Made by a program: the position numbers and the translations under genes
Notes under the pieces: model-generated
Told to the model about the DNA's origin: nothing
Databases searched by the model: none
The model's input: the letters and a program-made list of their open reading frames with translations, nothing else
NCBI RefSeq assembly: GCF_964188315.1
Contig: NC_135662.1
Coordinates: 7,564,001-7,628,000, forward strand
Length of the DNA stretch: 64,000 nucleotides
Source: Podarcis muralis
Lineage: Eukaryota
Direction of reading: 5' to 3'
In this document: positions 1 through 63,673 of the stretch, in pieces
Numbering within the stretch: the stretch's first letter is position 1
Layout: the number at the start of each line of letters is the position of its first letter

Positions 1-623
1 AAGCAGCAAGATGAGACTTAGAAAAACATATGTATTGATTAGCCTGACATTGAGATTATTGCTTTTGCAAATGAACTACATCAACTTGAGACGTTCACAT
101 ACCTGTGAGAAAATGCTGATCAGCAATATGGTGATTGGGAGACAGGAAATGCAGCACTCAGCGCTGGAATAAGTAGATGGTAGGAAGGCTTGCAGAAATG
201 AATGCAACCCAACGGGAATAAAAGCAGATATGTCCTCAAGTTCCCTGTATGAACTTTAGGGCTCCACCCACCCTTTTTCGAATTCTGCCCACATCATGTG
301 ACAAAAATATTCTTTTCAATGGTTATCAAAATTTTGAAGATAGGAGGAGGTTCTTACCACATAAAGGCATTCTTGAGAAAATTGGGTTAGCAAATTGCAG
401 GGAATGAGGAACCAGACAACACTCTGTGATGCAATCAGGAGAACTATTTTTACTGAGTAGTGTCATGTGTCGTCTTCATTTTGCTATGCTCTAGCTGGTT
501 AACATGGCCATGGGTACACAAGAAACTCAAAGATATACATGCAAATGTATTTATTTCTTATTTCATAATATTCATATACTGCTTAATGGTGAAAATCTCA
601 AAGCAGTTTACAGTTTACAGACA

Positions 624-880
624 NNNNNNNNNNNNNNNNNNNNNNNNNNNNNNNNNNNNNNNNNNNNNNNNNNNNNNNNNNNNNNNNNNNNNNNNNNNNN
701 NNNNNNNNNNNNNNNNNNNNNNNNNNNNNNNNNNNNNNNNNNNNNNNNNNNNNNNNNNNNNNNNNNNNNNNNNNNNNNNNNNNNNNNNNNNNNNNNNNNN
801 NNNNNNNNNNNNNNNNNNNNNNNNNNNNNNNNNNNNNNNNNNNNNNNNNNNNNNNNNNNNNNNNNNNNNNNNNNNNNNNN
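624..880. other. Assembly gap (257 N)
   Basis: Run of N. Confidence 1.
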
Positions 881-2458: not shown

Positions 2459-3439
2459 TTAGCACTTTGTTTCAACAGAGGTCTCTGCTTCCTCTGTTGA
2501 GCTTTCCTCCTCCTTGAAAACATTCTGGAGTATGGCTTTCATGCTCTTCCTGTGTCTGCCTCTCTTCTGCCTCCCAACCAGGAAATAGATCAAAGGGTTA
2601 ACACTGCTGTTCAGGCAGGCAAATAAGTAGACATAAATTGAAGAAAAGAGAGAGGCTGAATCAAAAACATAAGGGCTGATGTAATAGGCATTTAGTGGAA
2701 ACGAAAAAATGATGAAGAAAAGAAGAGCAAGCAAGATGGCTATTTGAGTTTTACCCCGCCTTCGCTGTTGCGATTTGAAGGAGACCTTGAGGCAGAGAAT
2801 TAGAGTTGAGATAGTCATGAGCGGGAGGCAAAGGATGCCGTTCACAGCATATTGGTAACGTTTCATGGTATAATTGTGTACCATTTCACTCAGGCGGAGG
2901 GTGAAGGTAATTCCACAGAGAAGGCTAGAAAGTACCCATATTATGGAACACAAAGTGGTGGACAAATTTGCTGGCCGGCGGCATCGATGCCAAATTGGGA
3001 AGAGGACTGACACACACCTGTCAATGCTGATGGCTGTCAGTAGATATTGACCAGCACTGTACATTACTTGAAAGACATCTTGTAGAAAATCATACAGAGG
3101 TCCATAATAGTCTCCTGTTGCAAACAAAATCATTTCCATAAAAAAGTTAGCTGTGACTACACCCAAGTCCGCAACAGAGAGGTTCAGGATGTAAATGGTG
3201 AAAGAGTTCCTCTTAATGCAGAAGCTAAGCAGCCAGACAACAGTCCCATTCCCTAAAAGCCCCAAAATGCAAATCAAAATTGTGAGTATAGAAAATATAT
3301 ATATATTTGGGTAAATATCCAAAATCCATTCTGGATAATCATAACTACTATTGTTGGAGGACCCAGTTGCATTGTCTTCTCCATAATAGTCTTCTTTAGC
3401 ATTGAAAGGAGACAGGGCCATTGGGCTGTAATTGGCCAT
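2459..3439 (-). CDS. MAS-related GPCR (MRGPR/MAS1-like), divergent paralog 1, intact main coding exon (326 aa from the internal ATG; probably extended to 3483 plus exon 4662-4689)
   Basis: 7 hydrophobic segments; GLLGNGTVVWLL, YILNLSVADL, LLTAISIDRCVSVLFPIWHRCRRP, NSSVNPLIYFLVG motifs typical of the MRGPR/MAS family; splice acceptor ...ccacccccagcag| ending at 3484. Confidence 0.93.
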   Translation of the reverse strand: MANYSPMALSPFNAKEDYYGEDNATGSSNNSSYDYPEWILDIYPNIYIFSILTILICILGLLGNGTVVWLLSFCIKRNSFTIYILNLSVADLGVVTANFFMEMILFATGDYYGPLYDFLQDVFQVMYSAGQYLLTAISIDRCVSVLFPIWHRCRRPANLSTTLCSIIWVLSSLLCGITFTLRLSEMVHNYTMKRYQYAVNGILCLPLMTISTLILCLKVSFKSQQRRRGKTQIAILLALLFFIIFSFPLNAYYISPYVFDSASLFSSIYVYLFACLNSSVNPLIYFLVGRQKRGRHRKSMKAILQNVFKEEESSTEEAETSVETKC

Positions 3440-3689
3440 TGTACTCAGTCGTTGCTGTTGCGCTTCTTCTTGTGTAGATATGTCTGCTGGGGGTGGAGAG
3501 GGTGGAATTAGTCTTTGTTAATGAATAAAGATGAAACTAAAACTTTTCAGCCTACTCTTCCATGTCTTTGTGAGTTAATTCTTGAGTTAATTCCTAATAT
3601 GAGAGTTAATTTTTAAGGTGAAATGGCTCATCTGTTTCATCTCGAGTTCAAGCTACCTCTTCAGTAACAAACCTAATGTCAGGGCATGG

Positions 3690-4229
3690 CTGGATGAAGA
3701 GGAGTGGTGGGAGCCTCTTGCCCTATAGCCCCCCGCCCCCGAGGATGCAGAAGATTAGGATATTTTTAATCCAGTTGAAAGCGATACTGCCACATGGCTT
3801 CTGAAATGATTTCTCTCCCATCTCCTTACGGTCTTCAGATAAGAACATCTTGGAGATCCCGGGCCACAGGGAGGTTAGGCTGGCCTCAACCAGAGATAGG
3901 GCTTTTTCAGCCGTGGCCCCGATCTGGTGGAACACTCTGCCACAAGAGACTAGGGCCCTGCAGGAGTTGACATCTTTCTGCAGGGCCTTCAAGACAGTGC
4001 TGTACCATCAGGCCTTTGGCCAAAGCACAATCTGACCCCCTCCTTCCTTCTGTAATCCTCACAGACCTCTAGCCCAATGGTTGCCATTAATTTGATTCTG
4101 AATTGATTTTAGAATGTTTTTTAATTAATTAGCTGTGATTTTATGTAAAATGTGCTGTTTTTCCTGTTGTTAGCCGCTCTGAGCCGGGCTTTGGCCAGGG
4201 AGGGTGGGGTATAAATAAAATGTTGTTGT

Positions 4230-4263
<34 letters not shown>

Positions 4264-4270
4264 GTTGTGA
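3690..4270 (+). mobile_element. L2-type LINE 3' fragment ending in (TTG)n tail
   Basis: DRAFSAVAPIWWNTLP peptide matches L2 ORF2 C-terminus; ttagccgctctgag...ggtataaataaa 3' end; (TTG)n 4221-4268. Confidence 0.6.
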
Positions 4271-4661
4271 CATAAATGCAGAAGGTTGACAGGCCATATT
4301 TGGCCCATCGGTTGGAGGTTCCCCACCCCTAGTTGATAGAGGTACAAAGATTTTTGGGTCATGCATTGGAGCCATCTCCACTTGCCAATGAACAACGGGG
4401 AGCTTGCTCCAAGGCTCCTGGTTTTTCCTTTGCAGTTTCACTGGCCAAATTAGGAACCTGCTTGATTTAGTACAACATCAGGCTCAGTGCACTCCCTGTC
4501 CTACTGGAAAAGGCAAAACAGAAATGGGGAACACAGAACAAGATGAAAAAAGTTGTGAAACTGGTTTACTGAGATAAGCAAGAGATGGCTAGAGGTATTC
4601 ATTTTATTGTAAAAAGTGGAAATAAGCAGGCAAGAATTTCTAACTTAAGCTTTTCGCTTAC

Positions 4662-4689
4662 CTGTGACAAACATTGGATCAGATATCAT
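4662..4689 (-). CDS. Predicted upstream coding exon of paralog 1 (MISDPMFVT+G, phase 1); exon about 4662-4722
   Basis: ATG ATA TCT GAT CCA ATG TTT GTC ACA G|gtaagc; strong donor; in frame with the 44-nt leader 3440-3483. Confidence 0.7.
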
Positions 4690-5196
4690 GATGGAGAGAG
4701 AAAAAACCAGCAGTATATATTCCTGTGCTGGAATAAACAACCAGAAGATTTGCAGACATCAATGCCACTCCCAAGTCTTGAGGAAACATTCAATGCATTT
4801 AAAAGCTCATGGCAAGATGTACAGCAATGTGCCCGTTTGCCTTCAGTTATGCTTAATCCGTTTGCCAGTGACAAGACAAAAACGATTCTCACTGGATTGC
4901 CAATACAATCATCTGCAAATTTAGGAGGAGATTATTTTTTGCAATACCCTAGAATACCACTCTTGCAAGAAGTGGGCTTGCAAGCAGTAGGAAACAAATG
5001 ACTCTGAATTGATCAGGTGAAATGCATTTATTGAATAGAATCATAAAAAGCTTCTAAATTTTCGTGCTGAAACTGGAATTATGGAGGTACAAAACTGGAA
5101 GTTATGGATGTACGAAAAAGCACTAAGAGCATGCAATATTATAGCAAATGTAAAAATTTAGGGTGGTATAGGTGAGTATAGGGTAGTATACAAATT

Positions 5197-9057: not shown

Positions 9058-9218
9058 TATTTGCTGTTGATTGGGGACAAACATCAGTAGGGTTTTGGAA
9101 GGGATATTCAAAGCCTTAGTGTTGGACCTGAAGCTACTAAGTCTATCAGGCGCTGAGATCTCCAGAACTCATTCTGTCCTAGTCCTGCCACCCTTGCAGA
9201 TGAAATATGTTCACATAC

Positions 9219-9246
9219 CTGTGAGAATCTGTGGCTCAGATACCAT
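9219..9246 (-). CDS. Orphan copy of the upstream MRGPR coding exon (MVSEPQILT+G, phase 1); exon about 9219-9275
   Basis: ATG GTA TCT GAG CCA CAG ATT CTC ACA G|gtatgt; acceptor ccccagcacag|. Confidence 0.5.
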
Positions 9247-9884
9247 GAGCAGGAGGAAGCAGGAGTAAGAGCGTTCTGTGCTGGGGAAAGCAGGCAATTG
9301 AAGGATTTGCAGGAATCAATGCAATGCCCAAGTCGCAATGAAAACTTGTAAGACTGACCCAGCTAATGTCCTGTAAATTATCCTCTCCTCTTCATCTGCG
9401 CTTAATCAGTTTGCCAACATCTTGTGACAAGAAGAAACTGTTTCTTTACTGGTGATCAAGATAGCCATCAGCAAAATTAGGAGGAGTTTGTTGCCGCCTT
9501 AAGTCTCACTGTTATAGAAAGAACTCTTGATAAAAGGTGGTTTCCTAGTCATTGGGAAGCGGAAAGCAATTAACAACTCTGTGACTTAATCGAGTGATAT
9601 TCATTTATTGATTAATAGCATAGTATGCTTTTATCTTTCCATGCTCAACTTGGTTAACATAATAATCTATATACCATAAAGTACAAAAACACAGGGAATA
9701 TTGCAGCCAATGGATACAGTAACATAAGAGCCATGAGAAGTTTCTTCTGGAAAGTGGGGAATTCCTGTAGATTTTTCCCCACTCCCAAATGTTAACTACT
9801 CAATTGCTAACTACTGCTAACTACTCAAAACTGTGCCATTTTTTAAAACCTCCATTTTCCTCATATCAGATTCCCCCGAGGATC

Positions 9885-11523: not shown

Positions 11524-12492
11524 TCATAACTGAGTTTCCAAAGAGATCTCCCCTACCTCTGCAGGGTTTTCCTCCTCTTTGAAAACATTCTGGAATGTGG
11601 CTTTCATGCTCTGCCTACACCTGCCTCTTTTCTGTCTTCCAACCAGGAAATAAATCAAAGGGTTAATACAGCTATCCAGATAGGCAAGTATGAAGGCATA
11701 TTCTAAGAAAGAAGGAGGTTCTGAATCAAAAACATAAACAGTGATGAAAATGGTATTGAGTGGAAATGAGAAAATGATGAAGAAGAAGAGAGCAAGCAGG
11801 ACCATAATTAGAAGTTTTCCCCTCCTCCTCTGGTGTGATTTAAAGCAAACCCTGATAAAAAGGATCAGAGTGGCGATAGTCATGAGTGGGAGGCAAAGGA
11901 AGCCATTCACAATAAGATGAATGCCCAGTATGTTATAAACATTGAAATCAGCCAGAAGGAGAGTGAAGTGAATTGCAGGGAAAATAGAAGAAAGTCCCCA
12001 TATTGAAGCACAAACAGCGGTGGACATATTTGGTGGCCGGTGGCATCGATGCCAAAGTGGGAAAAGGACAGCCACACACCTATCAATGCTGATGGCTGTC
12101 AGCAGAAATTGACCTGTGCTGTAGAATAGGAACATGAGAATAAGAATGTATACTAGAAGGTGTTTGAGGACAGATACTTCAAACAGGGACCATATATACG
12201 AACTAAGATTAACTGTGAGTAAACCAAAGTCAGCTATGGAGAGGTGCAGGATGTAAGTAGTGGAAGGAGTCCTCTTAATGCAGAAGCCAAGCAGCCAGAT
12301 GACAGTCCCATTCCACCAAAGTCCCAAAATGCTGATTAAAAAGCAAATATATAGATACATATACTCTCCTAATGTCAATCCTGAATTATTATTAGTGAAG
12401 CTATTGTTAGAGAGAACAGTTCCATTGTCCATTCCGTAATATTCCTCTCCAGCATTCATTGGGGACAGTGATGGGAGGCTGTAATTGATCAT
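11524..12492 (-). CDS. MAS-related GPCR paralog 2, intact (322 aa)
   Basis: Uninterrupted ORF with MRGPR motifs (LLTAISIDRCVAVLFPLWHRCHRP, NPLIYFLVG); acceptor ttcttccagcag| 40 nt before ATG. Confidence 0.92.
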   Translation of the reverse strand: MINYSLPSLSPMNAGEEYYGMDNGTVLSNNSFTNNNSGLTLGEYMYLYICFLISILGLWWNGTVIWLLGFCIKRTPSTTYILHLSIADFGLLTVNLSSYIWSLFEVSVLKHLLVYILILMFLFYSTGQFLLTAISIDRCVAVLFPLWHRCHRPPNMSTAVCASIWGLSSIFPAIHFTLLLADFNVYNILGIHLIVNGFLCLPLMTIATLILFIRVCFKSHQRRRGKLLIMVLLALFFFIIFSFPLNTIFITVYVFDSEPPSFLEYAFILAYLDSCINPLIYFLVGRQKRGRCRQSMKATFQNVFKEEENPAEVGEISLETQL

Positions 12493-13629: not shown

Positions 13630-13690
13630 CTGTGACTAACGTTGGATCAGATATTGTGATAGAGAGAGAGAGAACCAGAAGTACGTAATC
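13630..13690 (-). other. Upstream (non-coding) exon of paralog 2
   Basis: Donor cacag|gtaagc; ATG position reads ACA; acceptor AG appears mutated (ccagtg vs cctgtg on + strand). Confidence 0.5.
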
Positions 13691-13789
13691 CAGTGCTTAT
13701 GATTAAAGGTGCCATCTTTTTCTTTACTTTTCCAACATTGGTTATTTGTTCCATATATTTTTGCTAGTTTCACTGGTGTTAAATGCCCA

Positions 13790-18832: not shown

Positions 18833-18895
18833 CTGTGACTAATGTTGGATCAGATATTGTGATAGAAAGAGAGAGAGAACCAGAAGTAAGTAATC
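18833..18895 (-). other. Upstream (non-coding) exon of paralog 3
   Basis: Acceptor caagcacag|, donor cacag|gtaagc; ACA in place of ATG. Confidence 0.6.
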
Positions 18896-20498
18896 CTGTG
18901 CTTGAAGATTTGCAGACACCAATGCAACTCCCGAGTCTTGAGGAAGCATTCAATGCATTTAAGAGCTCATGACAAGATGTGCTGGATTGTGCCTGCTTGC
19001 CTTCATTTATGCTTAATCAGTTTGCCAGTGTCATGTGACAAGAGAAAAACAATTGTCACTGGGTTGTCAATATAGTCTTTAGAGGATTGTGATCAGGCAC
19101 ACTAACAGCTCCATTTGTAAAATATACAAAAGTGCTTTGAAAGGATCTGTTACACTTCAAAAGCTTGCAAGTAAGTTTTAAGCACTGAGAAGCACTTTGC
19201 TCCCCACGCTGGAGATTTCCAATTCACCCGGGGAAAGAAAGCCCAGCTAATGGGCTAGAAAGAGCAGGATGATGGTTCCAGCAAGAGGACCTCATTTTTT
19301 TCTGGGAAACCTCCTAGAAGGGGATACATACAGCCAATCTACTCCCACTTGTAAGCAGAGAGTTCTGTTTGGATAAAAGTAGGCTGCTTGGAATCTCTCA
19401 AGCCTCTTTGGTCCCAGATGCAAGCTACAAAAATTCTATGCATGGCAGGAGAGAGTGCAGGAAGGTAAGGAAGGCCCTTCTCATGGCAGAATTGGGGTGA
19501 ATGGGAAGGATGAAGGCAGGAAACGGTGCAGCAAGGGTTTGTGAGTACATTTGCTCCTCTGCTTCAGGCAGCAAAATGTCTGGCACCAGCACTAACACTT
19601 CACATCCTTTCTTTTAGTTTTTTCTCCTTCTCTTTGGTGTCCTCAGATATTTCTTTTCCTTCATGCTCCTCCTCAAAGGCAACCTTTATGGTTAAGCTTC
19701 TGGACTCCTTTGTCTTCATCTCTCCTTCAGTTATAATATAGGATCATTTCCTGAACACACAGGAGATTGCTGAAGTATCTAGGCTGAGAAAAAAGAAACC
19801 TGCCCATGACTAATTGGAGCAATAACTAGTGGATATGACCATTTTAACAGGATATGAATTAGCCCTACCCGGCAGAGGCTGAATCTGGAATCATCTGCAT
19901 GCAAACCACTCAGCCTCAGATTTTGGATACAATACTCTATGTATAACTCTCTAACATACCTTGAACTGTGATTTCTATGCAAGGATATGAGAGGTTATTC
20001 TTTTGTTCCATTGCTTTTCCCCATGAAAACCTACTGTTTACTGTTGTTTTGGGCCAAACATCCGAAGGGTATTTGAAGGGACATTCAACCGCCTAGTGTT
20101 AGACCTTAAGCTACTAAGGCTATCAGGCACTGAGATCTCCAGAACTCATTCTTTCCTAGTCTGCCACTTGGGATCCCTATAATTATGTTCATGTCACTGT
20201 GCAAAATGCTTGCTAAATATACAAAAAGTACAAAAACACAGGGAATATTGCAGCCAATGGATACAGTAACATAAGAGCCAAGAGAAGTTTCTTCTAGAAA
20301 GTGGCGAATTCCTGTAGATATTCCCCCACTCCCACATGTCACCCCCTGCTAACTATGCAATATGTTGATTAAAAGGTAGAATCCCAAAGTATATACCAAT
20401 GGCCACTTGGATGACTTTAAAAGTGTACTGAACACATCAATGGATGATCAATTTATATTCTGCCTCCTCTGTGTGATGCAGTATGCCTCTGGTGACCA

Positions 20499-23437: not shown

Positions 23438-24316
23438 TCAAACCAGGAAATAAATCAAAGGGTTAACACTGCTGTTTAGGCAGCTGCATAAGAGCCCAAT
23501 AAATATTTTAGTACTGTTTCCACTTTCAAGGGGAAAATGGATTAATGAAATGCAAGTAAATGGGAAAGCTAAGAAGAGGAAGAAGAGGAGGGCAAGTAGG
23601 ATGGCTGTTAAAGCTTTTCCCTTCTTCCTCTGTTGTGATCTGAAGTAAACTTTTATAAACAGGACCAGAGTGGAAACAGTCATGAGTGGGAGGCAAAGTA
23701 TAGCATTTATTAGAAACAGGTAGAAAAGGGGATTTGTTATAACTAAAAAAATAAAAATAATCATGCTGATTACAGTGAGCAGGAAAGCAATGATCCATAT
23801 TAAGGCACACACAAGGGTGGAATAGTGTGGTGGTCGGTGGCATCGATGCCAAAGGGGAAAGACGACAGAAACACACCTGTCCATGCTAATGGCTGTCAAC
23901 AGATATTGACCAGTGTTGTACATGAACAATAAAGCAAAGGTGCCAAAAGATATTATATTGAAATAATAATCACTGGCATGTAAGAATGAAAATGACTCCA
24001 GAAGATATATAATGGACAAAGTAAATAAGCATATGAGAGCCCCAAGGTCAGCAGCAGCCAGATGCAGGATGAAGGTGGTGAAATGATTCATCTTCATGCA
24101 AAAGCCAAGAAACCAGATGACATTTCCATTCCCCATAAGTCCAAAAATGCTAATAAATAAAATGGAGACGGAGATAAAAATGTCTTCTATAGGATATGGT
24201 GATAATTCATGATCAAAACCATCCTGGGGGGTTAGGAGGTCAGTTCCATTTTCTGCTCCAAGATCTTCCCCTGAAGCATCCAAAGTGGACCAGGATCCCA
24301 GGCCATCATTGCTCAT
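23438..24316 (-). pseudogene. MAS-related GPCR paralog 5 (divergent) with a premature TGA directly after TM7
   Basis: ATG at 24316 (MSNDGLGSW), acceptor ttttctcctggtag| ending at 24361; ORF ends NPLIYFLV-TGA where paralogs have GGA; frame stays open for 37 more codons to TGA at 23324-23326. Confidence 0.85.
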
Positions 24317-26543
24317 TTTGCTTAATCTCTTCTTCTGAGCTATTTCTTCTATGGATCTTCCTACCAGGAGAAAATGAACAAATGTGGAGTCAGTTTTGGC
24401 TATAAAGCTCAACCATATTAAACTGAGACCCTCAAACTATAACAAAAGAGACATGCTGTACTGGGAAAATTTATGACTGATAAACAAAGAATGAAAGAAA
24501 TAAAAACTTTAGGAATATTATTCTTTAGAATGTTTTTCAAAATTTATCAGTTTCAAAGGTTATGGGGGGGGAATGCAGTTTGGCGATGGGTTATGGATCC
24601 CCCCCCATTAAGGAATCTGCAGGCACAGCATCAGTAAGCATATCATTTTTAACCTAAAATTCCCCTCTTCTGCTCTCGGAGTCAGACATAACATCTGAAA
24701 TTAGACTTGACTTCTCAAACTAACTAAACTGAGAGTGGGGCGGATGGATGGGGTCAATGTTTCAAATCTGGAGTGGAGAAGAGGAATGGGAGAAGGAGTT
24801 GAACATCAAGAAAACAAAAGCCATTATCAGTAGTAGTACCCCAGCCACATTGGACAGCTTCCAACATATATAAAAGCATAACAAAACAATGCACTGGGTA
24901 GGCATGTGTAAGTTTGTATTATTATTAAAATGTGATTTTTAACAAAACCAGATTAAATAAAACTCAAGTCAAATCCACTGTCCTGGTCTCACAGTGGCCA
25001 AACAGATGCTTAAGGGAAGCCTACAAACAGCTTTGGAACACAAAAGTCCTCTCCTCTTCTGTGGTTTTCTGCTGCCCCAACAACTCTTTGATTTCCCAAC
25101 CCCACTCGGGGCAACTTTGACATTTGTGGGAGACCAACCTGCTTTTTTTTTTTTTTTTTTTACGAGGGCATGGGGACACTTCTCTCCAATCCCAGATTTG
25201 ATAACATGACCCCTAACATTCTTCAGAGGGAAATAGGGATATTTTTCACTCCTCTCCTATTGACCCTCCTCGACCCCCATTATTTGTCCCCCACATAGTA
25301 TTTCCTAACATAAGAAGTGTCACCACCAGTAAATGGTTTATGAAAGAAACACACACTATGAACGATAACAGAAAAATAATCTACACAAGTTAAAATGAGT
25401 TTAAAGCAGCAAAATGAGAGCTAATATCTCTCTCTGTGTGTGTGTGTGCATGCTCACATGTGCTGATGAGCCTGACATTGAGATTTTTTTAAAATAAGGT
25501 TGTACCCCTATAGTAGAGCACTTGTGAGGCAGATTATTTGTTTCTCCAGCCCTGTATTCCCTTCCTCAGGGATTCAGCCTAGGATTTTCTGCCTTCAATG
25601 CATATGCACTTCTGCTTATGGTTCCCCTTCCGCTTTTGCAAACGAACTATGCCAACTTGAGACATTCCCATGCCTGTGAGCAACTGTTGATCAGCAGTCT
25701 AGTACAACATCAACCTCTGTGCAGTCCCTGCCCTGCTGGAGAAGGCAAAACAGAAATGGGGAACACAGAACAAGATGAAAAAAGTGGTGAAACTGATTGA
25801 GTGGGATAATAGACTGCTAGAGGTATTCATGGTATTTTAAAAAGTGGACATAAGTGGGCAAGTGACAGCAATAAAGGCTTTTCTCATGTTTTCTTTGATT
25901 TAAGAAAAGAAAACAGATCCAGGTAATTGAAAAGAAATGATATACTTGAATATATGCCTTATATGAGCCCCCTCTTCACTCATCTTGCATTCAGTAAGTG
26001 CATAGGTTAACATAATAAGCAGATACAAAGCTAAACCTTTTCAGATTAGTCTTTCATGTTTTGTAGCTATTTTGGAGTGGGTTGTTAAGGTGAAATGACT
26101 CCTGCTCTTTAATTGCCAGGTAAAGGGGCCAGTGGCGCTTGCATCTACCTGAATATATGGGGGGGGGGGGTTCAGAGAGTCACTATGATAGGTTTCCCTT
26201 ATTCCCCAAAGTGAAAATCCCTTGACATATGCCCTGGTATTCCTGGACATTTTGCAAATTTAGTGAAAATCCCAGACGTGTGCAGGAAAATCTGGACATA
26301 TAGCAGCCCTACTCTATGAAACACATCATCTTCCTTGGCAAAAGCTCTCAGTTCCCTTTCCCTCTTAAGCCTGTAACGAAACCTAAATACATCTTATTGA
26401 AATAACTGGCTAATCTTTCCCTGTTCACCTCACCTCCCATTCTTTCTTTCTTTGCTTCTCCATTGTTCAATTTTAGATTGAACACAGCCTCTCCAATCCA
26501 ACATGAATGCAATTCTTTTGTTCCCCTTTTCTATACATTTATG

Positions 26544-27334: not shown

Positions 27335-27362
27335 CTGTGAGAAGCTGTGGAACAGATATCAT
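27335..27362 (-). CDS. Upstream MRGPR coding exon (MISVPQLLT+G, phase 1); exon about 27335-27391
   Basis: ATG ATA TCT GTT CCA CAG CTT CTC ACA G|gtacag; in frame with the 44-nt leader of paralog 5. Confidence 0.55.
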
Positions 27363-28249
27363 GAGAAGGAGAAAGCAGGAGTCACAGCGTTCTGTGCTGG
27401 GAAAAGTAGGCAGTTGGAGGATTTGCAGGAATCAATGCAATCCCCAAGCCGCAAGGGAAACTTCTAAGTCTGACCAAGCCGATTGCAAAATGTTCTGTAA
27501 CCTACCCTCTCCTCTTCATTTTTGCTTAATCAGCTGGCCAACATCTTGTGACAAGAAGAAACTGCATTTACTGGTGAACAAGATAGTCATCAACAAAATT
27601 TGGAGGAGGCTGTTGCCCTCTAATCTCACGGTTGTAGAAAGTACTCTTGAGAAAAGCTGGTTTGCCAGTGTTAGAGATGGGGGAAGAAGCTAACACCTTT
27701 GTGACTTGACCGGGAGTAATTCATTTATTGATTAAAGCCATACCATGCTTCTATATTTCCATGCTCAATATGGTTAACAAAATTACAGATATACATGACA
27801 GTAGAAAAACACATGGAATATTGCAGCCAATTTATATAACGATTAACTATCATAAGGGGCATGAGAAGTTGCTTCCGGAAATTGGTAATTCCCTTTAATT
27901 TTCCATCCACTCTGAGGAATTCATGGAGGGTGCAACTACATATCAGGTTCTTCTTCTGCTCTTATATTCACTTGCCTGGGTGTAGGTCAAATGGATCTCT
28001 TAAGTTTTCACTGCAGAGTAGACGAGTACATGGTTTGCATGCTGTTATTTATTTGTGCTATTCGATGTGTATGGCTATATGTAGAAATTAAACATTATTC
28101 TTGGATTCAATTAACTTTTGTTTTCTAGCTCCAGCTTAGAGCAGAACACGAAAAACAGGCAATGACACCACAAAACCTTTGAAGTGTCTGGAAGAGAAGA
28201 CAGTTTTTCAAACCTGTTTTTGTTGACAACAACCAATAATATTTTTTTT

Positions 28250-29122
28250 CATAGAATCATAGAATCATAGAATCATAGAGTTGGAAGAGACCACAAGGGC
28301 CATCGAGTCCAACCCCCTGCCAAGCAGGAAACACCATCAGAGCACTCCTGACATATGGTTGTCAAGCCTCTGCTTAAAGACCTCCAAAGAAGGAGACTCC
28401 ACCACACTCCTTGGCAGCAAATTCCACTGTCGAACAGCTCTTACTGTCAGGAAGTTCTTCCTAATGTTTAGGTGGAATCTTCTTTCTTGTAGTTTGGATC
28501 CATTGCTCCGTGTCCGCTTCTCTGGAGCAGCAGAAAACAACCTTTCTCCCTCCTCTATGTGACATCCTTTTATATATTTGAACATGGCTATCATATCACC
28601 CCTTAACCTCCTCTTCTCCAGGCTAAACATGCCCAGCTCCCTTAGCCGTTCCTCATAAGGCATCATTTCCAGGCCTTTGACCATTTTGGTTGCCCTCCTC
28701 TGGACACGTTCCAGTTTGTCAGTGTCCTTCTTGAACTGTGGTGCCCAGAACTGGACACAGTACTCCAGGTGAGGTCTGACCAGAGCAGAATACAGTGGCA
28801 CTATTACTTCCCTTGATCTAGATGCTATACTCCTATTGATGAGGCCCAGAATTGCATTGGCTTTTTTAGCTGCCGCGTCACACTGTTGGCTCATGTCAAG
28901 TTTGTGGTCAACCAAGACTCCTAGATCCTTTTCACATGTACTGCTCTCAAGCCAGGTGTCACCCATCTTGTATTTGTGCCTCTCATTTTTTTTGCCCAAG
29001 TGCAATACTTTGCATTTCTCCCTGTTAAAATTCATCTTGTTTGTTTTGGCCCAGTTCTCTAATCTGTCAAGGTCGTTTTGAAGTGTGATCCTGTCCTCTG
29101 GGGTGTTAGCCACCCCTCCCAG
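28250..29122 (-). mobile_element. CR1 LINE, 5'-truncated, young
   Basis: Stop-free ORF2 C-terminus (LQNDLDRLENWA..MNFNREKCKVLHLG, LVRPHLEYCVQFWAP); (ATTCTATG)n tail; empty site at ~46235 in the duplicate unit. Confidence 0.95.
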
Positions 29123-30568
29123 TTTTCCATATGTGAACAACAGAATAAACCCAAAAATATACATACAAGATTATTTCATATGTAAGTAGCAACGTAAGAG
29201 AAGAAGCTGTAGGGCCTGATGATACGTACACTTGAGAAAAGTTTCTTTCCTAGTCATCAGGAAGCAGGAAGCAGCTAACAACTCTGTGACTTGATTGAAC
29301 GATATTCATTTATTAATTACTAATAGCATAGTATGCTTCTTTCTGTCCATTCTCAACCTGGTTAACATAATAATGTATATACAAAAAAGTACAAAAACAC
29401 GGAATATTGCATCCAATGGATAAAGTAACATAAGAGCCATCAGAAGTTTCTTCTAGAAATTGGGGGTTTCCTGCATATTTTTCCCCACTCCCACACGTCA
29501 CCCCCTGCTAACTACTCAAAACTCTGCCATTGTTTACAACCTCCGCTTTCCTCATATCAGATTCCCTCAAGGATGCAGCGTCGTCAAATATACCATTGCT
29601 TGAAGGGATTTAACTCAAACTGCTGCTGTTGTTTACAATTGTCAATATCCCCCTCTCATTTCCCCCCAATTTATACAAATGTCTGCTGTTGTTTGAAGTC
29701 ACCATTTCCCCCTTGAAAACTGGCTTTCACTGGCATGCAGTGATGGCCACCAACTTGGAAGGCTTTAAAAGAAGAATACAAAAATTAATTGGGAATAGGC
29801 CTATAAACAGATACAAATCATGGTGGAGGCTGTGCTCTGCTTCCACAGCACAAGGCAATGTGCTTTTGGATGCCAGTTGCTGAAAATTGCAGAAGAGGAG
29901 AGCTCTTTTGTGATCAGGCCATGCCTGCTCGTTTCCATCATGTATCTGGTTCAGCAGTGTGAGAACAGGATGGTGGAGTCAATGGGCAATTGGCCAAATT
30001 CATCAGGTCCTTCTTATGGTCTTAGATTCACTTCTTGGGAGTAGATCCTACTGAATTCTAAAGGGCTTACTTCTGAGTAGACATATATAAGATTGCTCTG
30101 CATGCATGCCATTTATTTGTGGTGCTGGGTGAGTATAGCTATGGGCAGAAATTAAACATTATTCTTTGATTCAGTTAACAGCAGAAACAGATAATGTAGC
30201 AAGCAAGATTTAACAGTGTTAACAACCATAGAATAGATTTTTCCATATTATGTGATTCCATCTCACTTCTTTTTATGCTGCTTTTGAGGCAGAAGTCAAT
30301 TTGTGTTTTGTCGTATCCATGATAGTCATTTTCTGACTTTACCTCTTGAACATTTCAAAATGTGCCTCCACTGGCGAAAACTGGCTTAGTCGGAGCTAGA
30401 ATGCCTAGATAGGACTGAAGTGATAAAGCTCAAAGTGATGACCTTTTAGAGCTTCCATAGCTTGAGTTTCAGTGGCGGTATTGACTCAGTAGAATTGTAA
30501 ATTGGAAACTAGATTGTGTCATCAGACTCACAATGATAAAGACATATTTTGGCAATATTTTTGAGCCA

Positions 30569-31537
30569 TCATAACTGAGTTTCCAAAGAGATCTCCCCTG
30601 CCTCTGCAGGGTTTTCATCCTCTTTGAAAACATTCTGGAATGTGGCTTTCATGCTCTGCCTACACCTGCCACTTTTCTGTCTTCCAACCAGGAAATAAAT
30701 CAAAGGGTTAACACTGCTGTTCAGAGAGCTGAGTATGAAGGCATATTGTGAGAAAAAAGGAGGTACCGAATGAAGAACAAAAAGAGTGATGAAAACGGCA
30801 TTGAGTGGAAAAGAAAAAATGATAAAGAAGAAGAGAGCAAGCAGGACCATAATTAGAAGTTTCCCCCTCCTCCTCTGGTGTGATTTAAAGCAGACCCTGA
30901 CAAAAAGGATCAGAGTGGCGACAGTCATGAGTGGGAGGCAAAGGAAGCCACTCACAATAAACTGAATGCCCAGTGTGCTAGAAATATTGAAATCAGACAG
31001 AAGGAGAGTGAAGTGAATTGCAGGGGAAATAGAAGAAAGTCCCCATATTGAGGCACAAACAGCGGTGGACATATTTGGTGGTCGGTGGCATCTATGCCAA
31101 AGTGGGAAAAGGACAGCCACACACCTATCAATGCTGATGGCTGTCAGCAGAAATTGACCGTTGGTGTACATAAATAGGAAAATCAAGTAAAACATGTACT
31201 CTTCAAGGTAAGTGAAGTATTTTCCCACTATGAAAGACATTCTATCAATAAACACAACTGTGAGTAAACCAAAGTCAGCTATGGAGAGGTTCAGGATGTA
31301 AGTGGTGAAAGGAGTCCTCTTAATGTAGAAACCAAGCAGCCGGATGACAGTCCCATTCCCCAAAAGCCCAAAAATGCTGATTAAAAGGTAGCTGATATTC
31401 AATATATACTCTCCTAATGTCAATCCTGAATTATTATCAGTGTACGTATTGTTAGAGAGAACAGTTCCATTGTCCGTTCCGTAATATTCCTCTCCAGCAT
31501 TCACTGGGGACAGTGATGGGTGGGTGTAATTGATCAT
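30569..31537 (-). CDS. MAS-related GPCR paralog 6, intact (322 aa)
   Basis: Uninterrupted ORF with MRGPR motifs; acceptor 40 nt before ATG. Confidence 0.93.
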   Translation of the reverse strand: MINYTHPSLSPVNAGEEYYGTDNGTVLSNNTYTDNNSGLTLGEYILNISYLLISIFGLLGNGTVIRLLGFYIKRTPFTTYILNLSIADFGLLTVVFIDRMSFIVGKYFTYLEEYMFYLIFLFMYTNGQFLLTAISIDRCVAVLFPLWHRCHRPPNMSTAVCASIWGLSSISPAIHFTLLLSDFNISSTLGIQFIVSGFLCLPLMTVATLILFVRVCFKSHQRRRGKLLIMVLLALFFFIIFSFPLNAVFITLFVLHSVPPFFSQYAFILSSLNSSVNPLIYFLVGRQKSGRCRQSMKATFQNVFKEDENPAEAGEISLETQL

Positions 31538-32483
31538 GGTGATCTGTCTTTGCTTTTCTACTTTGTCCGCTGTTTTCCTGCTGGAAGAATTTAGAGAATG
31601 GTAGAATTAGTCTTTATTAACAGAAATAAGCAAAGACAAAGCTAAAGCTTTGGAGATTAGTCTTTCATAGCTTGTAGCTATTATGGAGTGGGTGGTTAAG
31701 GTGAAATGACTTGCTCTTTAATTGCCAGGTAAAGGGGCCAGTGGGGCTTGCAGCTACCTGAATATATTTGGGGTTTCAGAGAGTCTCTATCATAGGGTTC
31801 CCATATTCCCCAAAGTAAAAATGCTTCCCAGGGCAAGGAACATAGCTCTGTGGTGCAACATCTGCCTCCTGTGTTGAAGGGTTCCATCCCTGACACGAAC
31901 AATGAGCGTATACCCTTGTCTGAAACCCTTGAGAAGTGCTGTCAGCCAGAGTCACACAACCATAGAATGTTAGAGTTGGAAGGGACCCAAGGGTTATCTA
32001 GTCCAACCCCCTGCAATGCAACAATGTAAAGCAATACTGGGCAAATTGGAAATAGCCAGTGTGACATTGTGCTTCCAGTTTTGGAGTAAGATCTTGGAGA
32101 CCAGCCATCAAATTCCCACACAGACATAAAACTCACTGGATAACTTCAAACCAGAGTTCCTCAGCCTGACCTATCTCACAGGTTTGTTGTGAGGATAAAA
32201 AGAGGAGCAAGACGAACTATGTATACCACCTTGAAAGCCTTGGAGGAAAGGTGGGTATAAATAAATAAATGGACTGAATTTTAGGAGGCAGCTTCCTATA
32301 CTTTTCCATTCCTAAAACCTCATACAGAATCTTTCACAGCTGTGTTATCTTTTTACCTTTTAACCCCAGGGGTTGAAGCTGTTCTTGTCAATCATCATCA
32401 TCATCAATGCTTAATTCTGCCACACCAATTACTCATCTTTCTGCTCTTGCAAGTGAAGAATTTATAATGAGCTTTTCGCTTAC

Positions 32484-32545
32484 CTGTGACTAACGTTGGA
32501 TCAGATATTGTGATAGTGAGGGAGAGAGAACCAGAATAAATAATC
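32484..32545 (-). other. Upstream (non-coding) exon of paralog 6
   Basis: cacag| acceptor, cacag|gtaagc donor, ACA in place of ATG. Confidence 0.6.
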
Positions 32546-32981
32546 CTGTGCTGGAAGATTTGCAGACACCAATGCAACTCCCAAGTCCTGAAGAAACATT
32601 CAATGCATTTAAGAGCTCATGACAAGATGTGCTGGATTGTGCCTGCTTGCCTTCATTTATGCTTAATCAGTTTGCCAGTGTCATGTGACAAGAGAAAAAC
32701 GATTGTCACTGGGTTGTCAATGTAGTCTTTAGGGGATTGTGATCATGCACACTAACAGCTCCATTTGTAAAATATACAAATGTGCTTTGAAAGGCTCCAT
32801 TACAATTCAAAAGCCTGCAAGTTTTAAGCACTGAGAAGCACTTTGCTCTGCACACAGTAGATTTCCAATACACCCGGGGAAAGAGAGCCCAGCTAATGGG
32901 CTGGAAAGAGCAGGATGGTGGTACAGTAGGGATACAGCAAGAGGACCTTATTTTTTTATGGGAAACCTCCTAGAAGGGAAT

Positions 32982-39027: not shown

Positions 39028-39065
39028 GTATGAGCTTTCGTGTGCATGCACACTTCTTCAGATAC
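39028..39065 (-). ncRNA. Minimal type I hammerhead ribozyme motif (inverted-arm copy)
   Basis: Reverse complement of 41116-41153. Confidence 0.65.
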
Positions 39066-39444
39066 ACTGAAACAGAAGTTGCCAGATCCTTCTATATAGT
39101 GAGAAGGTGGGGAGGGGTATTACTCAGAAGGGTGGTGGGAATGGGTGATTGGCAGATAGCTGTGATGAGCCTGTTGACGACTCTTAACGACTGCGATAGG
39201 TCTTACAGGAAAAAGCAAGGGGTGAGAAGGTGAAAAATGGCTTTGTCATGTATAATGAGATAAGAATCCAATGTCTTTGTTCAGACCAGGTCTCTCCATG
39301 GTTTTAAGTTTGGTAATAAGTTGCAATTCAGCAGCTTCTCTTTCCAGTCTATTTCTGAAATTCCTTTGTAGTAAAACAGCTACTTTGAGATCTTGTATAG
39401 AATGTCCTGGGAGATTGAAGTGTTCTCCTACTGGTTTCTCTGTC

Positions 39445-40935: not shown

Positions 40936-41115
40936 CAAAGCCATTTTTCACCTTCTCACCCCTTGCTTTTTCCTGTAAGACCTATCACAGTCGTTAAGAG
41001 TCGTCAACAGGCTCATCACAGCTATCTGCCAATCACCCATTCCCACCACCCTTCTGAGTAATACCCTTCCCCACCTTCTCACTATATAGAAGGATCTGGC
41101 AACTTCTGTTTCAGT

Positions 41116-45345: not shown

Positions 45346-45373
45346 CTGTGAGAAGCTGTGGTTCAGATATCAT
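45346..45373 (-). other. Copy of upstream MRGPR coding exon (MISEPQLLT+G) whose downstream partner is pseudogene 7
   Basis: ATG ATA TCT GAA CCA CAG CTT CTC ACA G|gtacag. Confidence 0.55.
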
Positions 45374-46444
45374 GAGAAGGAGAAAGCAGGAATCACAGAG
45401 TTCTGTGCCGGGAAAAGTAGGAAATTAGAGGATTTGCAGGAATTCATGCAATTCCCAAGTCTGACCAAGCCGATTGCAAAATGTTCTGTAACCTGCCCTC
45501 TCCTCTTCATTTTTGCTTAATCAGCTTGCCAACATCTTGTGACAAGAAGAAACTGCATTTACTGGTGAACAAGATAGTCATCAACAAAATTAGGAGGAGG
45601 CTGTTGCCCTCTAAATCTCACGGTTGTAGAAAGTACTCTTGAGAAAAGCTGGTTTGCCAGTGTTAGGGATGGGGGAAGAAGCTAACACCTTTGTGACTTG
45701 ATTGGGAGTAATTCATTTATTGATTAAAACCATACCATCCTTCTATATTTCCATGCTCAATATGGTTAACAAAATTACAGATATACATGACAGTAGAAAA
45801 ACACATGGAATATTGCAGCCAATTTATATAACGATTAACTATAAGGGGCATGAGAAGTTGCTTCCGGAAATTGGTAATTCCCTTTAATTTTCCATCCACT
45901 CTGAGGAATTCATGGAGGGTGCAACTACATATCAGGTTCTTCTTCTGCTCTTATATTCACTTGCCTGGGTGTAGGTCAAATGGATCTCTTAAGTTTTCAC
46001 TGCAGAGTAGACGAGTACATGGTTTGCATGCTGTTATTTATTTGTGCTACTGGATGTGTATGGCTATATGTAGAAATTAAACATTATTCTTGGATTCAAT
46101 TAACTTTTGTTTTCTAGCTCCAGCTTAGAGCAGAACACGAAAAACAGGCAATGACACCACAAAACCTTTGAAGTGTCTGGAAGAGAAGACAGTTTTTCAA
46201 ACCTGTTTTTGTTGACAACAACCAATAATAGATTTTTTCCATACGTGAACAACAGAATAAACCCAAAAATATACATACAAGATTATTTCATATGTAAGTA
46301 GCAACGTAAGAGAAGAAGCTGTAGGGCCTGATGATACGTACACTTGAGAAAAGTTTCTTCCTAGTCATCAGGAAGCAGGAAGCAGCTAACAACTCTGTGA
46401 CTTGATCGAGTGATAATCATTTATTGATTACTAATAGCATAGTA

Positions 46445-52076: not shown

Positions 52077-52132
52077 CTGTGACTAATGTTGGATCAGATA
52101 CTGTGATAGAGAGAGAACCAGAATAAGTAATC
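52077..52132 (-). other. Upstream (non-coding) exon of paralog 9
   Basis: cacag| acceptor, cacag|gtaagc donor, ACA in place of ATG. Confidence 0.6.
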
Positions 52133-53959
52133 CTGTGCTTGAAGATTTGCAGACACCAATGCAACTCCCAAGTCTTGAGGAAACATTCAATGCATTTAAG
52201 AGCTCATGACAAGATGTGCTGGATTGTGCCTGCTTGCCTTCATTTATGCTTAATCAGTTTGCCAGTGTCATGTGACAAGAGAAAAATGATTATCATTGGG
52301 TTGTCAATATAGTCTTTAGAGGATTGTAATCATGCACACTAACAGCCACTTTTGTAAAATATACAAAAGTGCTTTGAAAGGTTCTAAACTTCCATAGCCT
52401 GCAAGTACGTTTTAAGCACTGAGAAGCACTTTGCTCCCCACCAAGGAGATTTCCAAAACACCGGGGGAAAGAGAGTCCAGCTAATGGGCTAGAAAGAGCA
52501 GGATGATGATACAGTAGGGATACAGAACCTTTCTCCAGCAAGAGGACCTTTTTGTTTTCAGGGAAATCTCTTAGTAGGGGATACATATAGCCAATCTACT
52601 CCAACTTGTAAGCAGAGAGACCTCTCTGGATAAAAGTAGGATGCTTGAAATCTCTCAAGCCTCTTTGCTCCCAGGTGCAAGCTACACAAATTCTTTGCGT
52701 GGCAGGAGAGAGTGCAGGAAGGTAAGGAAGGCCCTTCTCATGGCAGAATTGGGGTGAATGGGAAGGATGAAGGCAGAAAAGGGTGCAGAAAGAATTTGGG
52801 AGTGATATTTGGTCCTCTGCTTCAGGCAGCAAAATATCTTGCGCCAGCACTATTGCATCATGTCTTTTCTTTCTGCTTTTTTCTCCTTCTTTTTGGTGTC
52901 CTCACATATTTCTGTTCCTTCATGCCCCTCCTCGAAGGCAACCTTTATTGCGAAGCTTCTGGACTCCTTTTTCTTCATCTCTCCTTCAGTCTGTGTTGGT
53001 ATCCAGCCCAACCATACACACATCAATTCTCAAGCCATGCATACGTTCAAACCTCTGAATAAATAAATATAGGAAACTGCCTTGTACAAGGTCAGACCAT
53101 TATTCTACCTAGCTCACATTGCTGACACTGACCAGCAGGGATATAGGCAGGAATCATTCCTGTCCCTACCTGGGGCTGCCACTGAGTGAATCCAGGACTT
53201 TCTGCACGCTAAGCTAAAGCTCTGCAGATGAACAAGAGCCCTCAGAACACCTGCAAGCATAAAGTGCATATGTCTCTGGAGACTTTGATAAGCGTTTTCT
53301 TTTTTTCTTTTCTTTTTTGAATATATATTGTAGTCTGTGCCAGAATGATGAATGGTGGACAGACTTGTGGGGGAAGCATTGCAGCTATGAAATTTACATG
53401 ATTTTGACCAAATTCACTGCAAGATGCACAGCTGAGTCCATTGATCTCCACCTCTTCTTAGCTTGCCGGCCTCATACAGGGAGAATGAAATGTTATTTTA
53501 TCACCTGTCAATATAGTCATTAGTGACCTTAGAGGAGAAGCCTCTTGCCACATGAGGTTTTCTCTCCTAAAAGAGCAGAGTGAGTTTTCTGCTTTAGGCA
53601 GCTGGTTTTTGGTATCATGTATTTGCCCAGGTGGGGACACGGGTGGTGCTTAAGACTTGTCGATCAGAAGGTCGGCGGTTCGAATCCCCATGACGGGGTG
53701 AGCTCCCATTGCTCAGTCCCTGCTCCTGCCAACCTAGCAGTTCGAAAGCACGTCAATGTGCAAGTAGATAGATAGATAGATAATACTTTATTCGGCTATA
53801 AGCCCACAAGGTAAAACCAATCAATAAATAAAATAGCATTTTACATTCTAAAATATCAACTAAAATATTTCAACGCATAATCTCCTTCACGTTACATACA
53901 ATCTCTAGATGTACCATATTGTGGCCTTGAATATAAAGATGGTGGATAGAGTTTACTAG

Positions 53960-63661: not shown

Positions 63662-63673
63662 TTTATATCATAT

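What the first reader, a model, noticed from the sequence alone, without database searches (positions are those of the whole stretch)
3440..4722. Hidden upstream coding exon gives divergent MRGPRs a 24-aa N-terminal extension
Seen: a ~60-nt exon-like element recurs nine times (about 103, 4662, 9219, 13630, 18833, 27335, 32484, 45346, 52077), always ending CACAG|GT on the minus strand. In four copies an ATG sits exactly 28 nt before the donor (MISDPMFVT, MVSEPQILT, MISVPQLLT, MISEPQLLT; phase 1). Paralogs 1 and 5 both have exactly 44 nt between acceptor and the internal ATG, which completes the frame: MISDPMFVT-D-ISTQEEAQQQRLST-MANY and MISVPQLLT-G-RSIEEIAQKKRLSK-MSND. Between those two leaders six of 14 codons keep the amino acid through synonymous changes (TCT/TCC, GCG/GCT, CAA/CAG, CGA/AGA, CTG/TTA, AGT/AGC), the signature of coding constraint. 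Inference: these receptors are two-coding-exon genes and single-ORF annotation misses their true N-terminus. Most mammalian MRGPRs are coded by one exon.
Basis: partly seen in the sequence, partly recalled or inferred. Interest (0 to 1): 0.72.

Follow-up and report, generated by a model that had tools for sequence, protein, structure and literature searches.

The report
Upstream start exon in lizard MRGPR genes
Each copy in this wall-lizard itch-receptor-type (MRGPR) gene cluster has a short upstream exon; in one intact gene it carries a start codon that would add about 24 amino acids to the receptor's outer tail, a layout public models already show for a related worm lizard but for which I found no transcript evidence in this species.

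Summary
The window is Podarcis muralis, with a tandem MRGPR-H-like/Mas-like cluster on the minus strand. Nine units carry a ~66-nt element ending CACAG|GT. Four have an ATG 28 nt before the donor. Genes 1 and 5 have 44-nt leaders that put that ATG in frame with the receptor.

The element is the conserved first exon plus about 270 nt of promoter of each duplication unit. RefSeq models of Rhineura floridana show the same two-coding-exon layout (MISETPFLT-[A]G-VSTPEEAEQQSLST-MANVSP). Their isoforms X1 and X2 differ by one residue, as the NAGNAG acceptor seen in gene 1 would give.

The leader shows an excess of synonymous change in the receptor frame only (shuffle P 0.003). It has no indels, while the adjacent intron has many.

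Against the reading:
- Five of nine copies lack the ATG. The four young group-A genes also lost 4 nt of leader, which breaks the frame.
- The nine exon-1 codons show no synonymous change.
- Gene 5 has a nonsense codon after TM7.
- Two ATG-bearing copies are an orphan or sit before a dead gene.
- The internal Met and its strong context are kept.
- No read or contig showed the junction, and one contig crosses the acceptor unspliced.

Only gene 1 would be re-annotated. An earlier follow-up in this scan reported split-exon MRGPR N-termini elsewhere in this genome.

The parts
4662..4727 (-). Gene 1 exon 1 (about 66 nt; 5' end not mapped). It ends CACAG|GTAAGC at 4662/4661.
   Evidence: The block conserved between paralogs runs from about 4930 to 4659 and stops at the donor.
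4687..4689 (-). Upstream ATG of gene 1 (tccatcATGa, A at -3). A second in-frame ATG lies at 4674-4672.
   Evidence: Both upstream ATGs are in frame with the receptor and open, and the 66-nt exon plus leader holds no out-of-frame ATG.
4728..4930 (-). Conserved upstream block, read as the putative core promoter of gene 1.
   Evidence: It is 80% identical to group A over 282 nt and 66% to gene 5 over 284 nt, higher than the flanking intron.
3484..4661 (-). Intron of gene 1 (1175 or 1178 nt). It holds an abundant interspersed repeat (about 3779-4213) and a (CAA)n run (about 4211-4275).
   Evidence: depth in the hundreds to about 2,000 at 3779-4213 in all contig runs.
3484..3489 (-). NAGNAG tandem acceptor (cag|cag) behind a pyrimidine tract. 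Exon 2 starts at 3486 or 3483, and both keep the frame.
   Evidence: Rhineura isoforms X1 and X2 differ by exactly the residue such an acceptor adds.
3440..3483 (-). 44-nt leader of gene 1, open in the receptor frame (ISTQEEAQQQRLST). An in-frame TAA at 3520-3518 in the intron closes the frame upstream of the acceptor.
2459..3439 (-). Gene 1 receptor ORF, 326 aa, 7tm_1. It stands in the public protein collection as a 326-aa protein starting at MANY.
   Evidence: P0001.
27335..27400 (-). Gene 5 exon 1 (group B) with ATG at 27362-27360 in weak context (cttctcATGa). Donor is CAG|GTACAG; a second possible donor 9 nt further on also keeps the frame.
24317..24360 (-). 44-nt leader of gene 5 behind acceptor ctcctggtag| (RSIEEIAQKKRLSK).
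23438..24316 (-). Gene 5 receptor ORF, 292 aa. It is cut by TGA at 23440-23438 directly after NPLIYFLV, and 38 conserved codons follow in frame.
9219..9284 (-). Orphan group-B exon 1 copy with ATG (MVSEPQILT). No receptor body lies between it and gene 1's exon 1.
45346..45411 (-). Group-B exon 1 copy with ATG (MISEPQLLT), upstream of a dead group-A-type receptor (44212-43254, with a stop and a frameshift).
13630..13695 (-). Group-A exon 1 copy without ATG (ACA), belonging to gene 12492-11524.
   Evidence: The leader is 40 nt, and the ancestral phase-1 frame meets TAG.
18833..18898 (-). Group-A exon 1 copy without ATG, belonging to gene 17526-16558.
32484..32549 (-). Group-A exon 1 copy without ATG, belonging to gene 31537-30569.
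52077..52142 (-). Group-A exon 1 copy without ATG, belonging to gene 51113-50154.
103..168 (-). Group-B-like exon 1 copy with ATA in place of ATG and a 1-nt deletion. Its receptor lies beyond the window start.

Best explanation
The recurring element is the first exon, with its promoter, of every tandem MRGPR-H-like duplication unit. It is spliced to an acceptor 40-47 nt upstream of the canonical Met.

The inferred ancestral gene, older than the lacertid/worm-lizard split and probably older than the split of the two receptor clades in this window, carried its start codon in exon 1. That exon gave 9 codons plus 1 nt (phase 1), and 14-15 more codons came from the start of exon 2, so the receptor had a 24-25-aa N-terminal extension.

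Gene 1 (2459-4727) keeps this layout intact. If its transcripts start upstream of 4689, scanning ribosomes would meet the exon-1 AUG first (A at -3) and make a 350/351-aa receptor with an acidic extra tail. The conserved internal Met, in strong context, probably still serves by leaky scanning or from shorter transcripts.

In the young lacertid-specific group A the extension has decayed: ATG became ACA and the leader lost 4 nt, so exon 1 there is purely non-coding. In group B the layout survives, but here it is attached to a gene with a nonsense codon, to a dead gene, or to nothing.

Shown: the sequence anatomy, the frame, the conservation pattern, and the identical public models in Rhineura. 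Inferred: splicing and translation in P. muralis.
For: - Anatomy and frame.
- Homology between the most distant paralogs covers promoter + exon 1 and ends 3 nt past the donor. Exon 1 is 82-86% identical between clades, against 63-73% for the leader and 62% for the first 60 nt of intron between gene 1 and gene 5.
- Rhineura floridana XP_061463872.1 and XP_061463883.1 begin MISETPFLT-AG/G-VSTPEEAEQQSLST-MANVSP. This is the same exon-1 peptide, the same phase, the same 44/47-nt leader and the NAGNAG pair. Two further Rhineura paralogs (P0014, P0126), an Ensembl-type P. muralis model (P0008) and two L. agilis models (P0002, P0030) also read the leader in this frame.
- The extension is 15/23 identical to Rhineura without gaps. 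The bona fide N-tail is 56% identical with 5 gap columns, and the TM core is 63%.
- Leader, gene 1 vs gene 5: Sd 8, Nd 8, pN/pS 0.26, shuffle P 0.003 in the receptor frame and 0.85 / 0.996 in the other frames. Gene 5 vs group A gives P 0.01.
- No indel in the 44-nt leader, against 25 gap columns in the adjacent 90 nt of intron.
- Every ATG in exon 1 + leader of the six genes is in frame and open; none is out of frame.
- The tree puts the ATG-bearing copies in both major clades and the ATG-less group A as a derived lacertid clade.
Against: - No transcript evidence in P. muralis. No run on record as RNA holds the gene.
- In read laying the raw RNA run X14 gave no read on gene 1. The three contig runs, exon-biased and possibly RNA, gave no cover of exon 1. 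The only contig over the acceptor (X3, 3258-3580) runs on into the intron unspliced.
- The nine exon-1 codons show 0 synonymous and 5-6 non-synonymous differences between gene 1 and group B.
- The internal Met and its A(-3) context are kept almost everywhere.
- All lacertid public models of group B, and the window's own gene 1 and gene 5, start at the internal Met.
- The extension of gene 5 is net +3, which is unfavourable for an outward-facing GPCR N-tail. That of gene 1 is -3.
- The leader's pS (0.92) is higher than that of the real CDS (0.53), so part of the signal on 14 codons may be luck.
Confidence: 0.55

Rival explanations
1. The element is a real but purely non-coding 5' exon, as in mammalian MRGPR genes. 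The in-frame ATG in a minority of copies is a tolerated accident: out-of-frame upstream ATGs are purged and in-frame ones are harmless. The receptor is made from the canonical Met because transcription starts at or after the ATG or because scanning is leaky.
For: - Five of nine copies lack the ATG.
- Exon-1 codons show no synonymous excess.
- Exon 1 is conserved as strongly upstream of the ATG as downstream of it, which fits a promoter or UTR function.
- The internal Met and its Kozak context are conserved.
- Public lacertid models start at the internal Met.
- No spliced read was seen.
- The family evolves almost neutrally (pN/pS 0.6-1.0), so a short conserved UTR can mimic coding.
Against: - The frame-specific synonymous excess and the absence of indels in the leader.
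- ATG + phase + leader length are retained in gene 1, group B and Rhineura, across a split at least as old as lacertids vs amphisbaenians.
- In the lineage that lost the ATG, the frame also decayed, as expected if the frame had been under constraint before.
- NCBI models the extended CDS in two isoforms in Rhineura.
Confidence: 0.35
2. The element is not an exon at all. It is a conserved promoter-proximal or enhancer block of the duplication unit whose GT is never used, and transcripts begin closer to the receptor ORF, for example inside what is here called the intron.
For: Contig X3 runs from the CDS through the acceptor to 3580 without a splice, and exon 1 has no cover in any run.
Against: - The donor is conserved in all nine copies with good consensus (CAG|GTAAGC, CAG|GTATGT), and homology ends exactly there.
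- Acceptors with pyrimidine tracts are conserved 40-47 nt before every Met.
- Public models in Rhineura, L. agilis and P. muralis splice into that acceptor.
- Runs X1-X3 are of unknown type and very shallow.
Confidence: 0.1

Closest known systems
RefSeq models of Rhineura floridana mas-related GPCR member H-like, isoforms X1/X2 (XP_061463872.1, XP_061463883.1)
   Same: Start codon in a short upstream exon encoding M-I-S-[DE]-x-x-F-x-T. Phase-1 donor. Leader of 14 (+1) codons ending LST before the internal Met. One-residue isoform difference, as expected of the NAGNAG acceptor seen in gene 1.
   Different: These are automatic predictions in another species. The P. muralis gene stands in the collection only as the 326-aa single-ORF form.
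Mammalian MRGPR genes (e.g. MRGPRX4): non-coding 5' exon(s) plus a single coding exon
   Same: A short 5' exon is spliced to the one large exon that holds the whole 7TM receptor. The four group-A genes here have exactly this layout. [quoted passage not shown]
   Different: In gene 1, group B and Rhineura the 5' exon carries an in-frame ATG, so the CDS would span two exons.
N-terminally extended proteoforms from an in-frame upstream AUG (alternative translation initiation, leaky scanning)
   Same: Two in-frame AUGs with no stop between them. The downstream one sits in strong context and is conserved. How scanning would treat them rests on general knowledge of eukaryotic initiation.
   Different: Nothing here shows which AUG is used.
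Split-exon MRGPR about 116 kb upstream in the same genome (earlier scan finding s1-179041)
   Same: A wall-lizard MRGPR whose outer tail is built from small upstream exons. That follow-up judged it a sound re-annotation already seen in models of sister lizards.
   Different: It concerns a different paralog, different exons and an acidic Tyr-rich tail. I did not test that claim.

Membership tests
MAS-related G-protein-coupled receptors (class A GPCR) | Rhodopsin-type seven-transmembrane domain | tested here: met
   Pfam 7tm_1, E 1.6e-15, 1.2e-14 and 5.6e-18 for genes 1, 5 and A12.
MAS-related G-protein-coupled receptors (class A GPCR) | Closest relatives are proteins named MRGPR or Mas | tested here: met
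   557 hits. The best are squamate 'mas-related G-protein coupled receptor member H-like' and 'proto-oncogene Mas-like'. These names are automatic, not tested functions.
Two-coding-exon MRGPR layout (as in the Rhineura X1/X2 models) | ATG in exon 1, phase-1 GT donor, AG acceptor 44/47 nt before the internal Met, open frame throughout | tested here: met
   Met for gene 1 and gene 5. Not met for the four group-A genes and the copy at 103, which have no ATG and a broken frame.
Two-coding-exon MRGPR layout (as in the Rhineura X1/X2 models) | Exon 1 joined to exon 2 in transcripts of this species | tested here: inconclusive
   no junction, no cover of exon 1, and one unspliced contig over the acceptor. 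The runs are shallow and of uncertain type, and the raw RNA run had no reads on the gene.
Two-coding-exon MRGPR layout (as in the Rhineura X1/X2 models) | Translation starts at the exon-1 AUG | not testable with these tools
   Needs ribosome profiling or N-terminal proteomics.
Two-coding-exon MRGPR layout (as in the Rhineura X1/X2 models) | Codon-level constraint on the extension | tested here: inconclusive
   Leader: yes (P 0.003, frame-specific). Exon-1 codons: no (0 synonymous changes). The receptor's own N-tail has pN/pS 0.94, so the test has little power.
NAGNAG tandem splice acceptor | Two AG dinucleotides 3 nt apart at the intron end, both in frame | tested here: met
   ccccag|cag|AC at 3489-3484 in gene 1 and ttccag|cag|G in group A.
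NAGNAG tandem splice acceptor | Both acceptors used | not tested
   Only implied, by the one-residue difference between Rhineura isoforms X1 and X2. There are no reads for P. muralis.

The most novel reading that the evidence does not exclude
The 24-25-aa pre-sequence is a functional module of lacertoid MRGPRs that has been kept for well over 100 million years. It would be an acidic N-terminal peptide that changes surface delivery or ligand gating (for example a tethered or cleavable tail). Paralogs would switch it on or off by gain or loss of the exon-1 ATG, and the NAGNAG acceptor would fine-tune it. Tandem duplicates with near-identical promoters would then differ in their receptor N-terminus by a one-codon switch.
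Probability: 0.07. Interest if true: 0.6.

Novelty: new member of a known kind. Interest (0 to 1): 0.3.

Why it matters
If the exon-1 start is used, one P. muralis receptor (gene 1), and probably its orthologs in other lacertids, is annotated about 24 aa too short at the ligand-facing end. That would affect expression constructs and ligand screens for reptile MRGPRs. It would also show that the 'single coding exon' rule of mammalian MRGPRs does not hold across squamates.

The reach is limited. The same layout is already in automatic models for Rhineura. A related split-exon case was already re-annotated in this genome by the scan. Most copies in this window have lost the feature. The cluster does give a small, clean example of an N-terminal extension decaying stepwise (ATG loss plus frame loss) in a young tandem array.

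Tried and rejected
All cross-species evidence is at protein-model level.
- RNA: the run search found no holder on record as RNA. The single read-laying run gave no junction and no reads from the raw RNA run.
- A word search with residues 1-40 of the Rhineura extended protein found only itself.
- The same search with the gene-5 leader + N-terminus found only a fused L. agilis model that reads the leader; all other group-B models start at MSNDG.
- The first try had a frame slip and was corrected.
- Literature searches for squamate or reptile MRGPR gene structure found nothing relevant. Only a remark on MRGPRX4's single coding exon turned up.
- I first read the L. agilis ortholog's loss of the internal Met (LSTTASFSP) as strong support. 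I rejected that, because Met-7 (SPM) is kept and could serve as the start, and the public model reads through the acceptor into intron-derived sequence.
- I rejected 'TATA box at 4719-4714, so the ATG is untranscribed': the motif is absent from the other copies.
Exon 2 with its leader was searched by reference (window:2462-3481:-, window:23441-24358:-). The 9-codon exon-1 peptide is too short for any search. The joined step was left out.
- Scripts used only short typed pieces (44 nt or less) for codon counting.
- The large representative search was not used, because the family is not in doubt.

Full report
**What is there**

The window is from Podarcis muralis: the window's own proteins sit on a 91.9-Mb contig and the nearest named relatives are lacertid. 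Its minus strand holds a tandem array of MAS-related receptors, all with the Pfam 7tm_1 domain. The receptor bodies lie at:
- 3439-2462 (gene 1)
- 12492, 17526, 31537 and 51113 (four young 'group A' genes, about 90% identical in DNA)
- 24316-23441 (gene 5, 'group B')
- 44212-43254 (a dead copy)

Retroelement ORFs fill the gaps.

**Check of the observation**

CACAG|GT with a homologous stretch of about 66 nt occurs at nine places on the minus strand. Four copies have an ATG whose A lies 27 nt before the last exon base. The other five have ACA (four group-A copies) or ATA plus a 1-nt deletion (copy at 103).

Genes 1 and 5 both have 44 nt between acceptor and internal ATG. The phase-1 donor then completes the frame.

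Gene 1's acceptor is a NAGNAG (ccccag|cag|AC). Both sites keep the frame, giving a 24- or 25-aa extension.

Seven of 14 leader codons keep the residue between genes 1 and 5, six of them by synonymous change.

The recurrence itself is not independent evidence. The copies are parts of duplicated gene units, and homology extends about 270 nt further upstream.

**Is it an exon?**

Between the two most distant paralogs (gene 1 and gene 5, 43% protein identity) the only non-repeat homology outside the receptor ORF is a block from about 270 nt upstream to 3 nt past the donor (4930-4659 against 27608-27332). The donors fit the consensus: CAG|GTAAGC and CAG|GTATGT, with a weaker CAG|GTACAG in two group-B copies that also have a frame-keeping alternative 9 nt on. 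An acceptor with a pyrimidine tract is conserved 40-47 nt before every Met. Public models in three species splice into that acceptor. I take the exon as real at about 0.85-0.9.

**Is it coding? Evidence for**

1. NCBI models for the worm lizard Rhineura floridana begin MISETPFLT-AG-VSTPEEAEQQSLST-MANVSP (X1) and MISETPFLT-G-VSTPEE... (X2).
   - These match gene 1's MISDPMFVT-(A)D-ISTQEEAQQQRLST-MANYSP in exon-1 peptide, phase, leader length and the NAGNAG residue.
   - From general knowledge of the NCBI pipeline, alternative isoforms are normally made only with transcript support. I could not verify this here.
2. The extension is 15/23 identical to Rhineura with no gap. The receptor's own N-tail is 56% identical with five gap columns, and the TM core is 63%.
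3. Codon test on the leader, gene 1 vs gene 5:
   - Sd 8, Nd 8, pN/pS 0.26.
   - Column shuffles reach this in 0.3% of trials in the receptor frame, and in 85% and 99.6% in the other frames.
   - Gene 5 vs group A gives 1%, and gene 1 vs group A gives 8%.
4. The leader has no indel, where the adjacent 90 nt of intron need 25 gap columns.
5. Every ATG in exon 1 + leader of the six genes is in frame and open.
6. In a tree the ATG-bearing copies fall in both major clades. Group A, which lacks the ATG, is a derived lacertid clade. It also lost 4 nt at the start of the leader, so the ancestral frame now hits TAG. That is the pattern expected when a formerly constrained frame is released.

**Is it coding? 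Evidence against**

1. Transcripts in this species:
   - The run search found no run on record as RNA that holds the gene.
   - The raw RNA run gave no read on gene 1.
   - The three contig runs cover mainly exon 2, so they may be RNA. They show no exon 1. The single contig over the acceptor (3258-3580) continues unspliced into the intron.
   - Depths are 2-10, and two of the three runs do not reach the 5' part of the ORF. This is weak negative evidence, not a refutation.
2. The nine exon-1 codons have 0 synonymous and 5-6 non-synonymous differences between gene 1 and group B. Exon 1 is conserved as DNA, upstream of the ATG as much as downstream.
3. The internal Met with A at -3 is kept nearly everywhere, which suggests it is still a start.
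4. All lacertid group-B models, and the window's own genes, start at the internal Met.
5. The leader's pS (0.92) exceeds that of the real CDS (0.53). The family evolves with pN/pS of 0.6-1.0, and 0.94 in the true N-tail.
6. The L. agilis ortholog lacks Met-1 but keeps Met-7, so it does not force an upstream start.

**Scope within the window**

Of the four ATG-bearing copies:
- The copy at 9219 has no receptor behind it.
- The copy at 45346 precedes a dead gene.
- The copy at 27335 precedes gene 5, which has TGA in place of the Gly after NPLIYFLV. The 38 codons behind it are still conserved, so this is a recent nonsense mutation.

Only gene 1 is an intact candidate for re-annotation. Its extension is acidic (net -3), like the Rhineura one (-4). 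Those of gene 5 and of the group-A leader are net +3. By the positive-inside rule (general knowledge) that would suit an outward N-tail less well.

**Mechanism proposed**

Transcription starts in the conserved block upstream of 4727. Exon 1 is spliced at 4662 to 3486 or 3483. Ribosomes start at the AUG at 4689 (A at -3) and add MISDPMFVT(A)DISTQEEAQQQRLST to the extracellular tail. Some ribosomes, or shorter transcripts, use the AUG at 3439. The anatomy and conservation are shown; splicing and initiation are inferred.

**Comparison and novelty**

Group A has the mammalian layout of a non-coding 5' exon plus a single coding exon (compare MRGPRX4). Gene 1, group B and Rhineura have a two-coding-exon variant that is already present in automatic public models. 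An earlier follow-up in this scan (s1-179041, not tested by me) reported another split-exon MRGPR in this genome as a sound re-annotation.

This is therefore a new member of a known kind: a plausible but unproven annotation refinement for one gene, with a tidy example of stepwise loss in its paralogs.

Exons were searched apart by reference, and the joined step was left out.

Noticed in passing
window 23438-23440 (minus strand): Gene 5 has TGA where relatives have the Gly of GRKKHSRS, right after the NPLIYFLV motif. The following 38 codons remain open and conserved. This looks like a recent nonsense mutation that removes helix 8 and the C-tail. The gene stands in the public collection as a 292-aa protein.
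   Followed up: partly
window 9184-9674 and 43254-45411: There are promoter + exon 1 copies without a matching body. The copy at 9219 has no receptor between it and gene 1. The group-B-type copy at 45346 precedes a group-A-type dead receptor.
   Followed up: partly
window 48197-48226 (minus strand): A public P. muralis model (P0034, 306 aa) for the dead receptor at 44107 borrows a start exon MAYGSIGKRK|gtaagt 4 kb upstream. It looks like an automatic rescue of a broken ORF.
   Followed up: partly
window 12118 (minus strand) and L. agilis model P0030: The TM3 motif NTGQ is encoded as ACAG|GTCA, a phase-1 cryptic donor identical to the exon-1 donor. An L. agilis model fuses two neighbouring receptors through it into the next gene's leader, in frame. 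Read-through chimeric transcripts between tandem paralogs may exist.
   Followed up: no
window 4662-4930 against 32456-32721: Promoter + exon 1 of gene 1 and group A are 80% identical by BLAST (88% by global alignment), while their coding DNA is about 72-78% identical and their proteins 55%. Either the regulatory block is more constrained than the receptor, or it has been homogenised by gene conversion.
   Followed up: partly
window 11527-12492 against 30572-31537: The young group-A paralogs differ with pN/pS about 1.0 over the whole receptor. This points to relaxed or diversifying evolution in the newest duplicates.
   Followed up: no
window 35448-41864 (+), 54367-63924 (-), 28337-29164 (-): Retroelement ORFs: a Penelope-like RT with a GIY-YIG domain (39271-40935), and LINE endonuclease + RT ORFs (36425-37216, 54367-56526, 61726-63924). 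The 275-aa ORF at 28337-29164 has no Pfam hit.
   Followed up: partly
window 3779-4275: Gene 1's intron holds an abundant interspersed repeat (depth in the hundreds to about 2,000 in all contig runs) next to a (CAA)n microsatellite.
   Followed up: no
window 624-880: A run of 257 N (assembly gap or masked). I left it untouched.
   Followed up: no
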